A stretch of DNA of 64,000 bases from Octopus sinensis (Eukaryota): the NCBI RefSeq assembly GCF_006345805.1, contig NC_042999.1, positions 102,796,001-102,860,000 of the forward strand, written 5' to 3'. The notes beneath the pieces were generated by a model. The model had not been told where the DNA came from, searched no databases, and saw only the letters and a list, made by a program, of their open reading frames with translations. Position numbers and translations under genes: made by a program. This document shows positions 1,390 through 7,395 of this stretch, one piece after another (position 1 is the first letter of the stretch; each line of letters starts with the position of its first letter).

Positions 1390-4300
1390 AAGAATAGTGA
1401 CGAAAAAAATCATATTACTAAAAGAAACTAAAATTCACTATTTTCCTCACGAGGCAGGGCTTAGTCATGTCCGGTGTTATTTTTATTGATGAAAAGATTT
1501 TCTCAATAGGACTCAACCCCACCGAAGCTAGGCCTTAACGCCTAGCTACCCCTCGCAGTAAAAGTAAAGTAAGGTAAAAAAAAAAAAACACTGCAGGGTC
1601 ACCAACAAACCAGCCTCTCAGTCCAAAAGAAAAAAAAAAACCACTTTAGGACTTCACTGAGGGGGTGTTATGTTGGGGTCGGTGAGGAAATAGGCTTATA
1701 TGTGAGGGCTAATCCCTCAACATATATGTACAAATTAAGGAAGTCCGGCTGAGGAGTCGTTGAAATGATTTATCTTTTATGCCCAAGGCATCTAGTGCAA
1801 GACTCGCTGGCCTGCACCAGGCACCACAGGCACCGATTGGGAGTCCATGCACCTCCACCGGCCAATTAAACTCCTGCAACAGCAATTGTTCAAGTGGACG
1901 GTACTTGTGCATTTTCTCGAGGGCAGCCTCTTTCAAGGCGTCCCCCTGCTCCAATCTGATAGTCACATCGACGACAACCACCTTTTCCGGACGACTAAAG
2001 ACCAGGTCAGGTATCAGCCTAGAGCCGTTTATAATATATGACGGCTCTACACTGACACTCCAACCATGGTCTACAGCTTCCTTCGCCACCAGGTCGCATA
2101 TTTTGTTATGCCTGGCGAGTCGTGGCCCTTTAAGAGCACCACAGACTCCACTGTGAGAAATGGTCTCTGCTCCTAATCTACATCTCGGACACGTGGAGTC
2201 GCCACGGAGTCCACGTGTCAGTTTCACGGGTAGGGTAAACGTTGGAGCGCATCTTGAGTAAACTCAAGAAGCTCCCTTCCGTGATCCTACCCGGCCTACT
2301 TATCCAACTATTGCCTATAACATCCCCACGGTAAGCCGCCGCACACACTCCCTGCACCGGCTGGGCCGCCCATCGATGGGAGTGCACCAGCCGGATGTCA
2401 GGGTCGTATTTGGCCGCGTCCGCAGGAAGTAAAGGCAAGTCGAAGGAAACTATTAGTTGCTGGTTCTGTTCGGCTAATCCTGCAGAATCAGCAACCTTTC
2501 TTACAGAGACATATTCAGACATTAGTAGGCGAAGGTTACGGCGAATGACTGACTTTGGTATCAGTCTCACCATTTGGTGGAGACTTAATCCTTCATCTCG
2601 CCGGCTGCTACATAGGAAGGAAGATGAGGTAGAGTAGGGGAGATGCAGCATTCTCTTGGCCCCCACGCGGATGGCCGTGTCAAGCCTCTCTAATATCCCC
2701 CTTGACGGCAACGCCTGCACCAGACCATAAAAAAATCTAGGCAGGTAATAACGTTGAAGCAAGAGGAATTTTTGTCGGGGTTTCAGCGGAGCCCTGCACA
2801 TTTTATCAATGTCCAGTGACACCTGCTCCACTGAGTTTAAGTCAAACTCCCGACTCGAAATTGAAGTCCACGTGGGGATGCTAACACCAAGATAAAATAC
2901 CTTATCCCCTGGTTCTACCTTTTTAATAGTGATCCCATTAATCATCGGCGGGGTGCCATCATTGACGAGGTAGGACTTGCCCCCAGCCGCGAATGGAGAA
3001 CCACGCACACTTGCCGACATTAAGCCCCAGTCCAACCGCGCTATAGAACTCCAGGCATCTATCCATAAGAGCCTGGAGCCCCTCACGCGATTTCGCAACT
3101 AGGGCCATGTCGTCAGCGTACGCGATTCCATCCACCCGGATCCCCTCAACATGCAAATCCCCACAGCCGGATAACACATCTAGCAGTGGGTCAGTTGCAA
3201 TGTTAAAGAGGATCGGCGAGAGCGCGTCCCCCTGTCTAACACCCCGACGAATCTCAATAGGTTCACTTAGTTGCCCATCAACTGAGAATCTGGTAGTGCT
3301 ACCTTCGTAGATCCCCTCCACGAGCGCTAAAACGTGTTCGTGGAACCCAAGTCTCCGCAGTCCCGCATACACCAAGGAGTGCGAGACTGTGTCGAAGGCC
3401 TTGGAGAGATCTAAGAAGGCAACCTCCAGCCGCGGTATTCTCAGCCGTGCTGGCCTCCCCATCGCGCGAGTGACGAGCTGTCGCAGGAGAAATTAATTCT
3501 CACTGCAGCCGTCCGCGCGAATAAAGTCACGTTGACTTGGATTCAGGGGAGTTACCTGAAGCATGCGTTTGGCGACCATCTTTGAAAATAAACGATAAAC
3601 CGCAGAGCATATCGTGATTGGTCGCCAATTTGCAAGATCGTATGGGTCGTCTGATCTCTTGGGTATGAGAATCGACTTACCCCGCTTCAGGATCTCGGGT
3701 ACTTTACCCGCCAGCAACATGCAGTTGCATATATTAGTTAGAACAGCTGGGTCCATCGCTTTAATTTCACCTATGGTGATACCGTCTGGACCCGCCGCTG
3801 AGGAGATCTTCATCTTACGTCTACTTATCTTAATCTCCTCCACGGAGAACGGACTCAAAATGGAGTCGCTCTCAACCTGGGAGGAGGAGGGGTAGTTCTT
3901 CAGATCAACCTCAGGGCCTGGAGCAGAAAGCCTCCCTTTATAAAATTCCTCTATCGCATAGATTGGAATAGGGCATTCCTGCTCCTGTTTTCACCTAACA
4001 CAACAGCAAGGAGCTTCTTCCTATTCTTTCTAAATAAGTCCTGATGTCGGGCATAAGCTTGACGCTTATCCCGACGCCTAAGTCTAGTATTATTCTTGTT
4101 TTCTCTGTTAATCCTATCACTAACTAAGTTTCTCCTGTTGGTGTTAACAACTCTACGCGATTTATAATGCTCCACCCAGTCCGCTATAGTTTTCTCAAAT
4201 GAGCCCCAAGCAACCGTTGTCCCGTCCTCCACGAGTTCCAATAGGGCCTCGGAGAAGACTGCAGACCAGCGGGTATGCCCGGGGCATGCAGAATCGAGGA

Positions 4301-6617
4301 AGGGATCCTTCCAGTCAATACTAGACTGGGGTTCTCCCCCGATTTGTGATTGGGAGCTGGTCAAGGACTGTTCTGACCCTTGATGACTCTTGCGAGCCCT
4401 TTTGGCCAGATCAGCCCTTTTCGATCCCACCTGTTTGGCTGTTTTGCCCGGTAAGAATCGTGCAATGGCAGCATTGATCCGCTTTACCCCTGTCTTCTTC
4501 AGCTCCGACTCCTTTTCAACGAGGACCGCTACCTCCTCGTCGGACCAACAGCCCCTGCGTCTTTGGCCTATTGCCTCAGCAGCGGCTGCCCGATCGGCAC
4601 GTTTCTTCGCAATTTGCTCTAAGCGAGCAGCAATCCTGCGGGCATTCGCCACTACAGGATGCTTATGCCGAACGTGCTGCAATCGACCTATAGCCGTCAA
4701 AAAAGAACGGCTGCAGTGGTCACAATCAAGGGAGGCTAGAGCTGGACTAGGGGCAGGTGCTCTAAATGCACTGCCATCGCATCTACCTGCGTGACATCTC
4801 ATAGAATGGAGGTGTCCGCTTTCCCTATCACATTTAATGCACTTGTAGGCCTAATACCATGTCTACAAATAACATGCTCCCCTCAAGCATGGGGGAGGAG
4901 TAGCGCAGAGGACATAGCGGACAGGCTATGGGGCATGACGCGCAGGGAATTGTAAGTGAGAATTCACCCCCAACTGGAGTGGGGCTTGATACCCCCACTA
5001 CCTTCACTCGATCCATTTCTAAATTAAGAGAATGAATGGGGAGGTCCCTAGCGACCCTATCTCGGTCCGTCTCTAGATCAGAAGACCGGACTTCATCGAT
5101 GGGGTCATGTGCTAGGTCCAGTGGGAGTTGATCTCCTCTCACTATCAGGGAATGGTCCTTAAATTCTAATCTAAATATATTTTTCCTATTTTTATAATAC
5201 TTCAGTGTCGGACGCAAAGTTAAGCGCCCGACACTAGTCTTGTCAAAGCCTATCGAGCCACTTGATCTTACTTGCACCGGAGATGACTCGTTGTCCCGTG
5301 CAAGGGAGGGTCGTAATTCGGCCGACCGCATTTGGGTAATGCAGTCAGCCTGACGTGTGGGCCCCATCCCGGACCCACAGGCCACCAGTTTGGCGGCGCC
5401 TAGCTGCCGTATGTTTCTTAACTTATTAGTATTGGAATACATGTCACTATTCTTAGCGGCATTTAACTAGGGATCATGGCCGAAACGATAAAGTAGAACT
5501 TAAAGGAGGCGCATTACCAGCCCTACCAAGAAAAACAAGCTAAGCCACTAACCTAATCTCAAAGACCTTACGGCCACCCACTCAAGTCCGGAGACAAACA
5601 GCAAGCAGCCCCCCCCCCGAGAACTATTACCCCCAGGAAATTCCTGGGGGACTTGTCTAGGCTAAGCGGGGCCCGTGAGTGTATCCACCCCAGACCTGAA
5701 GCGGTGAACAAGAACGAGCCACCCTAAGATAAGTTCTAAGATAAGTCCTATTAAGGAAACCTCAACCGGTGTGTGAAGCGATAAACCACACTCAAGGGCA
5801 AATATAGAAGACACGGCTAAATTCCCTCGTCACAACAACCGGCTAGACCATTAACATCAAAAGGGCGCCCATCCCTATGGTAGTCACCCCCAAAATTGAG
5901 GCAAGAGAAAGGGCCTTCACTCTGTACTGCTACAAGACAACTGCTCGACTGTAAGAGCCGGACAGTCCCCCATCTACAGCCCGTGAAGGGCTCTATTCTA
6001 TAACACCGCCGCTGGGTACCTAGCTCACAGGCCCCTCCACACCAGCACAGGAGGAACCGGCGATCCCCCACACGGGAATCAACCAGAAACCCCGGCCCTA
6101 CATAAGCCCAAGACAACTCACTGGCTCCATAAAAGAGCCGCAAACTTCACTTTATTGTCCCCAAGGGAGAACCGCCCACTATCCATCACACGCAAACAAG
6201 AGAACTAACCGGGTCACTAATGACCAACAAGGACTCCGAGGGTTCGGCCAGCGGCCGCTCAACTAAACTAGCAGGGAGGCATGCACCCCCCTATCAGAAT
6301 CGCCCAAAATCCGCTAGCTCCCCACCAAACTAAATTGGAACCGCTTTGGAGAAGGAAGGACACGTTTAGTTTGTCCAATGCGAGGTTTTTATCCGGCATT
6401 GCGCAAAGCATATCCGGCATCGACCCCACATGGACGTAAGCTCTCTTACTACGCCAAGGTAGTGTCCAAAAGGGTGAAGCCTGGCAGTGCAAAGCCCACT
6501 GAATCCCGACAGGTCATAACATACCAGGTCATAACATACCAGACCTACCTGTTAAAGCATCCACCTCAAAAGAGATCATAAGAAACAGGCCCCACAAGAG
6601 AGAGAAACGGGCCCCAC
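1390..6617 (-). mobile_element. R2 non-LTR retrotransposon, near full-length copy A (three-zinc-finger, R2-A-type architecture)
   Basis: Three zinc fingers, Myb (WSDEEVAVL..KTAKQVGSKR), RT (GPDGI, LDLSKAFD, GVRQGDALSP, YADD) and CCHC+RLE (CPRC..H..C, RHN, PDLV, VVDVTI, K..KY). The 5' end abuts the 28S R2 site. The 3' boundary is approximate. Confidence 0.95.
1709..5442 (-). pseudogene. R2 ORF broken by at least five frameshifts or stops
   Basis: ORF pieces 4834-5442, 3951-4802, 3493-3858, 2959-3462, 2178-3098 and 1709-2227 give consecutive R2 domains in different frames. Could be decay or long-read indel error. Confidence 0.9.
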
Positions 6618-6793: not shown

Positions 6794-7395
6794 TGCTGTC
6801 TCTTCCGGTGCTTCTTCCCTTCTTTCCTTCTCTTTTGGTTGGCACTCGGCCCTGATATGTCCCTTCAACCCGCAGTTGAAGCATCTCGGCTTTCTGCCTT
6901 CCACGTGGACTATGAGTCGCTCTCCTCCGCCAACATTTATGGCTTCTGGGATTTCCTCGAGTGTAGTCACCTCGGCTTGAATTGCCATTGTCAAGCTCTG
7001 GCCTCTCCACCGGTCTTCCTCTACCACTGTTTTGTTTTTCCGGTGTTACCGCTAGTGAACTATTTTCTTCACCTGACACAGGTGAGTAGGAGATTGGTGT
7101 ATCCATTTCCATTTTTCGCAACAGGTTGGCTTAAAACAGCCTTTCAAAAAATTGGCTTAAAAAACCTTTCACAAAAGATGGCTTCAGAAGCCTTTTCACA
7201 AAAATTGGCTTAAAGAGCCACAGGATAGCAATAATTCCTCCGCAGGGGGAATTTCAACAAATAGCTTTCGAAGAAAGCAATTAAGTTCTTTTTTTAAAAA
7301 ACAATAATAATAAATCACGGTAACAATAGCAGTATTCACAGGAGAAAATTGACACGTACCAAATTAGTCTAACGAAGAAGTCGGCGTAACATGCT
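6794..7395 (-). mobile_element. Tx1/L1-clade 5' fragment (5'UTR plus internally deleted ORF1)
   Basis: Homologous to 11335-12445 with about 500 bp deleted. Retains the zinc knuckle CFNCGLKGHIRAEC and breaks off at EEAPEETA. Confidence 0.9.

What the first reader, a model, noticed from the sequence alone, without database searches (positions are those of the whole stretch)
1390..6800. R2 element outside rDNA carrying a 176-nt 28S leader
Seen: the R2 5' end joins 28S exactly at the R2 site (..GACTCTCTT|GTGGGG). The 28S piece stops after 176 nt and fuses, possibly through a short AGCA-type microhomology, to ORF1 of an unrelated Tx1 element. There is no other rDNA in 64 kb. Established: R2 inserts site-specifically into 28S, is co-transcribed with it, and is released by an HDV-like ribozyme that cuts at, or a few tens of nt upstream of, the junction. 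Inference: 176 nt is too long for normal processing. Either an unprocessed 28S-R2 co-transcript was retrotransposed ectopically, or an R2-bearing rDNA piece moved at the DNA level.
Basis: partly seen in the sequence, partly recalled or inferred. Interest (0 to 1): 0.78.

Follow-up and report, generated by a model that had tools for sequence, protein, structure and literature searches.

The report
Dead R2 pair on stray 28S stub
A 176-base scrap of the large ribosomal RNA gene, stranded next to a broken LINE element far from any other ribosomal DNA, carries two stacked, dead copies of the ribosomal-gene-specific retrotransposon R2. It is a known kind of genomic relic, and its origin cannot be settled without the sequence just left of the window.

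Summary
On the minus strand, a 28S fragment (6793-6618; Rfam 117 bits) ends at the R2 site, lacking AAGG or carrying GTGG in its place. It is followed by a full-length but broken A-clade R2 (copy A, 6617 to ~1390). Its upstream end is fused to ORF1 of an L1/Tx1-type LINE with 2-3 nt of possible microhomology. No other rRNA sequence lies in the 64 kb.

Three things are new. Copy A's 3' end abuts a second, 5'-truncated R2 (copy B, ~1385 to beyond base 1) with no 28S between them. A and B differ by 11%, and dN/dS is 0.38 against about 0.72 in neutral simulations, so they came from two diverged, once-active R2 lineages. A truncated copy cannot carry a 28S leader.

I therefore favour (about 0.5) a stray or array-edge piece of 28S DNA that R2 hit twice. 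On that reading the 176 nt is target DNA, not an RNA leader. Ectopic retrotransposition of an unprocessed 28S-R2 co-transcript with a template jump remains possible (about 0.25).

The deciding 3' flank lies left of base 1, and this genome is not in the searchable collections. This is a new member of a known kind, of modest interest.

The parts
6794..7368 (-). 5' part of L1/Tx1-type LINE copy 1: 5' UTR plus ORF1 through the CCHC knuckle. It is cut off inside ORF1 at 6794.
   Evidence: 95% identical to LINE copy 2 at 11337-11575 and 82% at 12082-12413. Pfam zf-CCHC in ORF 6743-7027. Junction alignment. Lacks 506 nt that copy 2 has (11576-12081).
6791..6793 (-). Junction bases (A)CG that can be assigned to either the LINE or the 28S: 2-3 nt of possible microhomology.
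   Evidence: Three-way alignment of the window, LINE copy 2 and the L001 28S.
6618..6793 (-). 28S rRNA gene fragment, 176 nt, ending at the R2 insertion site. Its 5' end lies in the 3' strand of the lower stem of the large expansion helix.
   Evidence: Rfam LSU_rRNA_eukarya 116.9 bits, E 2.7e-27. Model mapping from L001. Overall 157 of 182 aligned columns match the L001 28S. Non-standard pairs and a 1-nt gap in the variable helix, and CGCGGG changed to TGCGGG, mark it as not part of a working gene.
6581..6624 (-). 22-nt tandem duplication spanning the 28S/R2 junction: CTCTCTTGTGGGGCC[C/T]GTTTCT, two units.
   Evidence: Tandem Repeats Finder: period 22, 2.0 copies, 95% match.
1390..6617 (-). 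R2 copy A, full length (~5.2 kb). 5' UTR 6617-5443, ORF remnants 5442-1709 (three zinc fingers, Myb, RT, CCHC, restriction-like endonuclease), 3' UTR 1708 to ~1390. Dead.
   Evidence: Three-frame translation. Pfam RVT_1 E 4.3e-22. PDB R2 proteins E 4e-138. 624 homologues, the best 36-38% identical. Lesions: TGA in ZF1 (~4880), 4-nt deletion (~4848), TAA at 3493-3495, 2-nt deletion (~2210), and three +/-1 shifts in homopolymer runs (~4893, ~3975, ~2985).
1..1385 (-). R2 copy B. It is 5'-truncated (lacks about the first 620 nt of A), abuts A's 3' end directly, and runs off the left end of the window.
   Evidence: 87.5% identity to A 4612-5950. Boundary alignment. K2P 0.11 and 16 internal indels. 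dN/dS 0.38 against A. Two B-specific stops.
7405..12413 (-). LINE copy 2, near full length. It serves here as the reference showing where copy 1 is broken.
   Evidence: ORFs with APE (10639-9491) and RT (9421-8789). L1 ORF2p match E 1.9e-13. Self-BLAST.

Best explanation
The 176 nt is a piece of 28S DNA, not an RNA leader. It could be a stray rDNA fragment (orphon), the truncated first unit at an array edge, or an rRNA retro-pseudogene.

The fragment begins 176 bp upstream of the R2 site, where it is joined to a broken L1/Tx1-type LINE by an end-joining-type junction. Because it kept the sequence just upstream of the R2 nick, R2 used it as a target at least twice.

First, a 5'-truncated copy (B) was laid down. 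Later, or in one event through a template jump at this site, a full-length copy (A) of a diverged R2 lineage was primed at the same nick. A's 3' end therefore abuts B, and A's 5' end joins 28S at the usual place. Outside the homogenised array, everything then decayed.

Shown: the anatomy, the two junctions, the death of A and B, and the separate lineage origin of A and B.

Inferred: the order of events, re-use of an occupied site, and the DNA-level origin of the stub.
For: (1) A's 5' junction is at the canonical R2 site. It is of a type (28S ending ...GACTCTCTT) also seen in a genuine 28S-resident relative, L002.

(2) B is 5'-truncated, and A's 3' end abuts it with no 28S between. A truncated cDNA cannot carry upstream 28S, so B did not bring the stub with it.

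(3) A and B differ by K2P 0.11, yet dN/dS is 0.38 over 263 codons. Neutral simulations give a median of 0.70-0.75 and reach 0.38 or lower in 0-0.5% of runs. They are therefore products of two diverged, formerly active lineages, which means two templates. They are not an in-place DNA duplication of a dead copy.

(4) The element is A-clade: three zinc fingers, and a closer match to R2Tg-type proteins than to R2Bm. A-clade N-terminal domains bind only upstream target DNA, at -40 to -21 (PMC11204384). An occupied site therefore keeps the part that is recognised.

(5) The stub has non-standard pairs and a 1-nt gap in its variable helix and a CpG-to-TpG change in a conserved run. It has evolved outside a working, homogenised gene.

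(6) L001 shows that an R2-bearing rDNA unit truncated about 130 nt from the R2 site can sit in non-rDNA sequence in another animal.

(7) Non-rDNA R2 copies are documented in five Drosophila species (PMC2718515).
Against: The 3' junction that would show downstream 28S is outside the window, so the central prediction is untested.

Stacked R2 insertions at one site are documented for R1, not clearly for R2. [quoted passage not shown]

No other rDNA lies within the 57 kb to the right.

The model needs an extra DNA-level step, whereas the co-transcript model explains the 28S/LINE junction in a single event.

The dN/dS test rests on 263 codons of broken ORFs. The alignment skipped 8 codons that contain gaps or stops.
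Confidence: 0.5

Rival explanations
1. Ectopic retrotransposition of an unprocessed 28S-R2 co-transcript. Reverse transcription was primed at a chance nick in the LINE and copied the 3' part of one R2 RNA (B). It then jumped to the 3' end of a second RNA, an R2 (A) still attached to upstream 28S because the ribozyme had not cut. It ran 176 nt into 28S and was joined to the LINE by microhomology.
For: One event explains the 28S/LINE junction with its 2-3 nt microhomology, the A-B junction without 28S and the absence of other rDNA. R2 reverse transcriptase template-jumps in vivo, to U12 snRNA and tRNAs (PMC3414825). Full-length R1 copies outside rDNA carry 7-28 bp 28S leaders (PMC2718515). Normal R2 processing leaves at most 36 nt (PMC3774820). 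The leader's 5' end falls at the foot of the long expansion helix, a plausible stop for a polymerase.
Against: The acceptor RNA must be uncut at its 5' end yet trimmed exactly at the R2 3' end, because no downstream 28S lies between A and B. Two diverged lineages would have to meet in one reaction. R2 endonuclease is highly site-specific, so the priming nick must be accidental. No ribozyme defect can be shown: there is no Rfam HDV-type hit, and my own motif scan is non-specific.
Confidence: 0.25
2. R2 landed in R2. An older full-length R2 (lineage B) sat on the 28S stub. Copy A, whose RNA kept about 11 nt of 28S-like leader (CTCTCTTGTGG), inserted into B's 5' UTR and deleted B nt 12 to ~620. 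What looks like a 22-nt duplication is then B's first 11 nt followed by A's own leader and 5' end.
For: The two 22-nt units differ at one R2 position (GGCCCGTTTCT against GGCCTGTTTCT), in line with the 11% A/B divergence. It explains B's 'truncation' and the repeat together. R2 lineages that cut upstream propagate their junction variants (PMC3774820).
Against: A simple slippage duplication followed by one mutation fits equally well. It needs non-specific nicking inside an R2 5' UTR. The -9/-11 cleavage it assumes rests on a ribozyme candidate that is not statistically supported.
Confidence: 0.1
3. Assembly artefact: the 28S/LINE join, the A/B join or both are chimeric joins of repeats, and some frameshifts are polishing errors.
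For: Three of A's five frameshifts are +/-1 in homopolymer runs, and one of them is shared with B. That is the signature of long-read consensus errors, so the base-level quality of this repeat cluster is uncertain.
Against: There are no Ns in the window. The joins share only 2-3 nt, not a repeat long enough to mislead an assembler. A, B and the stub are each individually diverged rather than collapsed consensus.
Confidence: 0.05

Closest known systems
R2 non-LTR retrotransposon, lineage A (three N-terminal zinc fingers), as in Taeniopygia guttata R2Tg and other solved A-clade R2 proteins
   Same: Single ORF with ZF x3, Myb, RT, CCHC and a restriction-like endonuclease. 5' junction at the 28S R2 site. 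PDB matches at E 4e-138.
   Different: This copy is dead and at most 38% identical to any protein in the collection. Its 3' end joins another R2 instead of 28S. The 28S it sits in is only a 176-nt stub next to a LINE.
Extra-rDNA R2 copies and 28S-tagged R1 copies of Drosophila (Stage and Eickbush 2009, PMC2718515)
   Same: R elements outside the rDNA array that are incomplete or diverged. Full-length non-rDNA R1 copies carry upstream 28S at their 5' end.
   Different: Those R1 leaders are 7-28 bp and fit processed transcripts; here the 28S piece is 176 nt. Here two R2 copies of diverged lineages are stacked head to tail.
Tandem R1 arrays formed by re-insertion at an occupied 28S site (PMC2718515)
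   Same: Several R-element copies head to tail at one 28S site, made by repeated target-primed reverse transcription.
   Different: R1 copies are separated by the 14-bp 28S target duplication that is re-targeted. Here no 28S separates A and B, so the re-use would rest on upstream recognition alone.
L001: R2-bearing, truncated rDNA unit in a 390-kb metagenome-assembly contig
   Same: An R2 in a 28S gene that is cut off close to the R2 site and continues into non-rDNA sequence. There is a short duplication at the 5' junction.
   Different: In L001 the cut is about 130 nt downstream of the site, the 18S-5.8S-28S upstream part is complete, and the R2 ORF is intact (1275 aa).

Membership tests
R2 (28S-specific non-LTR retrotransposon) | Single ORF with N-terminal zinc finger(s) and Myb, a central reverse transcriptase, and a C-terminal CCHC plus restriction-like endonuclease | tested here: met
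   Conceptual translation shows CPLC...H..H, CxxC...HxxxxC, CDHC...HxxxH, WSDEEV (Myb), RT motifs, CPRC...HxxxC, and PDLV...VVDVT...K. Pfam RVT_1 E 4.3e-22. Alignment to solved R2 proteins over most of their length, with the best stretches covering about 520-800 residues, E 4e-138.
R2 (28S-specific non-LTR retrotransposon) | 5' end joined to 28S at the R2 site (...CTCTTAAGG) | tested here: met
   28S runs to ...GACTCTCTT at 6618, followed by GTGGGGCC. This is a 4-nt shortfall or an AA-to-GT change, within the known range of junction variants (PMC3774820). L002 has the same type.
R2 (28S-specific non-LTR retrotransposon) | 3' end joined to 28S at TAGCCAAATGCC | tested here: not met
   A's 3' UTR runs directly into the 5'-truncated copy B at ~1385-1390, and no 28S motif is there. 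B's own 3' junction is outside the window. This concerns the locus, not the element's family.
R2 (28S-specific non-LTR retrotransposon) | HDV-like self-cleaving ribozyme at the 5' end | tested here: inconclusive
   No HDV-type Rfam hit at E<=5. My own motif scan finds two complete candidates, but 70% of shuffled sequences do too.
R2 lineage A (three zinc fingers) | Three N-terminal zinc fingers (CCHH, CCHC, CCHH) before the Myb | tested here: met
   All three are readable in A and B with the same spacing as in P0001 and P0002 (x2, x12, x4), once a 1-nt shift inside ZF1 is allowed.
Tx1 clade of LINEs | ORF2 with an N-terminal apurinic-type endonuclease and RT, grouping with Xenopus Tx1L rather than L1 in a phylogeny; usually target-specific | tested here: inconclusive
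   APE and RT are present, and the closest solved protein is human L1 ORF2p at E 1.9e-13. The homologue search gave 6 unnamed hits. No tree was made, so only 'L1/Tx1 group' is supported.
rDNA orphon or array-edge unit | rDNA sequence on both sides of the insert, with ends unrelated to transcript ends | not testable with these tools
   Only the upstream side is in the window. This genome is absent from the protein and contig collections (no self-hits), and two metagenome scans found nothing.

The most novel reading that the evidence does not exclude
The locus records, in a single event, an R2 ribonucleoprotein acting away from rDNA. It would have started target-primed reverse transcription at a chance nick in a LINE, jumped in vivo from one R2 RNA to another of a different lineage, and copied 176 nt of uncleaved 28S. 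That would be natural evidence for ribozyme failure, R2-to-R2 template jumping and off-target integration together.
Probability: 0.25. Interest if true: 0.55.

Novelty: new member of a known kind. Interest (0 to 1): 0.3.

Why it matters
R2 is the model for site-specific target-primed reverse transcription and is now being engineered for gene insertion. Natural records of what it does off target, or at already occupied targets, are therefore useful.

If the favoured reading is right, a stray 28S stub that keeps only the upstream half-site can still attract an A-clade R2. A site that is already filled can also be hit again. This fits the biochemical finding that A-clade proteins read only upstream DNA.

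If the rival reading is right, the locus shows uncleaved co-transcripts and R2-to-R2 template jumps being fixed in a genome.

Either way the copy is dead and has no present function. Its value is as a molecular fossil.

Tried and rejected
(1) Extending left of base 1. This genome is not in the protein or contig collections: neither the R2 query nor the LINE query gave a self-hit.

(2) Two metagenome scans found nothing. One used the 22-nt junction, the other a 50-nt 28S pattern meant to fetch a close relative's 28S.

(3) In-place DNA duplication of a dead copy as the origin of A and B. A shared -1 shift in ZF1 first suggested this. I rejected it because dN/dS is 0.38 against a neutral value of about 0.72, and because the shift sits in a C-run that could be a hot spot or a consensus error.

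(4) The LINE inserting into 28S. I rejected this because the LINE is truncated at its 3' side, which target-primed insertion does not produce. Splicing or 3' transduction also does not fit: there is no GT at the break, and the LINE is not complete.

(5) Ribozyme identification. There is no Rfam hit. A motif scan gives candidates at 6622/6461/6363 and 6613/5690/5590, but it is non-specific.

(6) Context of R2 homologues on long contigs (L003, L004, L005). They have no 28S at the R2 site, so they are different kinds of element and did not help to set priors.

(7) The literature search found no description of R2 in cephalopods and none of stacked R2 copies.

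
Full report
ORIENTATION. Everything relevant lies on the minus strand. Read 5' to 3' on that strand, the order is:
- LINE copy 2 (12413 to ~7405)
- the 5' part of LINE copy 1 (7368 to 6794)
- a 28S fragment (6793 to 6618)
- R2 copy A (6617 to ~1390)
- R2 copy B (~1385 to beyond base 1)

CHECK OF THE OBSERVATION: THE 28S PIECE.
Rfam finds one eukaryotic LSU rRNA match in the whole window, at 116.9 bits and E 2.7e-27, and nothing else at gathering score. I fetched a real R2-bearing 28S gene (L001) and aligned it.

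The canonical upstream half-site ends CTCTTAAGG. Here the 28S is followed by GTGGGGCC, so either AAGG is missing or AA has become GT. A genuine 28S-resident relative (L002) has the same ...GACTCTCTT| junction type. Uniform small 28S deletions at R2 5' junctions are also described (PMC3774820).

A 22-nt tandem duplication, CTCTCTTGTGGGGCC[C/T]GTTTCT, spans the junction.

CHECK OF THE OBSERVATION: THE LINE JUNCTION.
Upstream, homology to the second LINE copy runs through 6794. Only CG, or perhaps ACG, at 6791-6793 is shared by both partners.

The LINE has a CCHC knuckle in ORF1. Its endonuclease region matches human L1 ORF2p at E 1.9e-13. 'L1/Tx1 group' is therefore supported, but 'Tx1' itself was not tested.

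WHAT THE ELEMENT IS.
The stitched translation of copy A has three zinc fingers, a Myb, an RT (Pfam RVT_1, E 4.3e-22), a CCHC motif and a PD...D...K endonuclease. It matches solved R2 proteins at E 4e-138 and R2Bm at 4e-79. It also matches named R2 proteins of termite, silkmoth, Trichinella, fish and birds at 28-38% identity over nearly its full length. It is an A-lineage R2.

Copy A is dead. Its lesions are:
- a TGA in ZF1 (~4880)
- a 4-nt deletion (~4848)
- an in-frame TAA (3493-3495)
- a 2-nt deletion (~2210)
- three +/-1 shifts in homopolymer runs (~4893, ~3975, ~2985)

The homopolymer shifts may be real, or they may be consensus errors of the assembly.

The first 1327 bases of the window are 87.5% identical to A 4612-5950, and weaker similarity continues to about 1368-1385. 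This is a second R2 copy, B. It lacks about the first 620 nt of the element, and it begins immediately after A's 3' UTR. No 28S lies between them.

A and B differ by K2P 0.11 and by 16 internal indels.

DID A AND B DIVERGE BEFORE OR AFTER INSERTION?
I tested whether this divergence built up after a DNA duplication of a dead copy. Over the 263 shared codons, dN/dS is 0.38, with 30.3 synonymous and 39.7 non-synonymous differences. I simulated neutral decay with the observed transition and CpG biases. The same estimator then gives a median of 0.70-0.75, and reaches 0.38 or lower in 0 to 0.5% of 400 runs.

Much of the divergence therefore arose while both lineages were under purifying selection. 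A and B were copied from two diverged, then-active R2 lineages. A rough split is about 0.13 synonymous divergence between the sources and about 0.05 shared later decay.

The later decay fits the few percent of damage visible in the 28S stub. The stub shows non-standard pairs and a 1-nt gap in the variable helix, and one CpG-to-TpG change in a conserved run.

A -1 shift inside ZF1 is shared by A and B. It lies in a C-run, so I give it little weight.

MECHANISM: WHAT THE LITERATURE ESTABLISHES.
- R2 ribozymes cut at the junction or up to 36 nt upstream (PMC3774820), so 176 nt is not a processed leader.
- R2 reverse transcriptase template-jumps in vivo (PMC3414825).
- Non-rDNA R2 copies exist in several Drosophila species, and non-rDNA R1 copies carry 7-28 bp of 28S (PMC2718515).
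- A-clade R2 N-terminal domains bind only upstream target DNA, at -40 to -21 (PMC11204384).

MECHANISM: WEIGHING THE MODELS.
Two facts from the window bear on the choice. B is 5'-truncated, so it cannot have carried upstream 28S. A's 3' end is joined cleanly to B.

If A had been reached by a template jump onto an uncleaved 28S-R2 co-transcript, that RNA would have had to be uncut at its 5' end but trimmed exactly at the R2 3' end. If the 28S stub was instead DNA, the whole anatomy needs only ordinary R2 molecules. A truncated insertion (B) came first. A second target-primed event (A) then started at the same nick, guided by the intact upstream half-site. Alternatively, a single event with a jump between two processed RNAs took place at that site.

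The stub's join to the LINE is then a separate DNA-level event: an orphon, an array edge, or an rRNA retro-copy. L001 shows that an R2-bearing rDNA unit cut off about 130 nt from the R2 site can sit in non-rDNA sequence elsewhere.

I put this reading at about 0.5, the co-transcript model at about 0.25, an 'R2 landed in an older R2' variant at about 0.1, and misassembly at about 0.05.

The order of events, re-use of an occupied site and the origin of the stub are all inferences.

LIMITS.
The deciding evidence is the 3' junction left of base 1. I could not reach it. Neither protein search returned a self-hit, and two metagenome scans were empty.

The ribozyme could not be located. Rfam gives nothing. 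My own descriptor scan yields complete HDV-like candidates but does so in 70% of shuffled controls. Interestingly, in L001 the scan picks a P1 starting at -13, which is exactly the length of that locus's 28S duplication.

The leader's 5' end maps to the 3' strand at the foot of the long expansion helix. This is compatible with a polymerase stop but proves nothing.

The organism looks like an octopus, judged from the SINE-like repeats. That rests on my memory only.

VERDICT.

The locus is a decayed relic of a known kind: R2 on a 28S fragment outside the homogenised array. It has one unusual feature, two stacked R2 copies from diverged lineages on a 176-nt stub beside a LINE. Interest is modest unless the left flank proves the co-transcript model.

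Noticed in passing
window 7405-12413 (minus strand) and 7029|7030: LINE copy 2 is a near full-length L1/Tx1-type element with ORF1 (CCHC), APE and RT, all interrupted by stops. Copy 1 lacks a 506-nt stretch of ORF1 that copy 2 has (11576-12081). The two copies lie head to tail only about 35 nt apart.
   Followed up: partly
window 7399-7442; SINE-like repeats at 14293-14538, 14896-15128, 36684-37114, 43307-43713, 52320-52549: The stretch just 3' of LINE copy 2 is about 87% identical to one end of an abundant ~245-nt SINE-like repeat. This may be a shared LINE/SINE 3' tail, that is, a mobilisation partnership.
   Followed up: no
window ~4893, ~3975, ~2985 and B ~287: Three of copy A's five frameshifts, one of them shared with copy B, are +/-1 changes in C, A or G runs. 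This is the pattern expected from long-read consensus errors as well as from slippage, so base-level accuracy in this repeat cluster is uncertain.
   Followed up: partly
L001 5540-5600 and 10060-10200: An intact 1275-aa R2 sits in a 28S gene of an unidentified animal, on a 390-kb contig of a metagenome assembly. It has a 13-nt 28S duplication plus TTT at the 5' junction and a canonical 3' junction. The 28S stops about 130 nt after the R2 site and runs into a 'ctcagtgacc'-type tandem repeat.
   Followed up: partly
L003 4001-7876 (Chrysemys picta chromosome CM062321.1): An intact 1291-aa R2-like ORF lies inside the PDE3B gene and is annotated as a PDE3B isoform. No 28S half-site motif lies within 4 kb on either side. 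It is either a non-rDNA R2 relative or a gene-model artefact.
   Followed up: no
window 6510-6542: A perfect 15-nt tandem repeat (GTATGTTATGACCTG, 2.2 copies on the minus strand) lies in the R2 5' UTR, about 75 nt from the junction. It is a second slippage-type duplication close to the 22-nt one.
   Followed up: no
window 33000-35100: A long TG/CA and TA microsatellite block has GC skew up to 0.44 and yields spurious 190-390-aa 'ORFs' rich in C, V, Y and I.
   Followed up: no
window 5600-5700 (A) and ~960-1090 (B): A perfect 9-bp hairpin (CCCCCAGGA...TCCTGGGGG) in the R2 5' UTR keeps its stem unchanged between A and B, which differ only in the loop. It lies inside one of the two unconfirmed ribozyme candidates.
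   Followed up: partly
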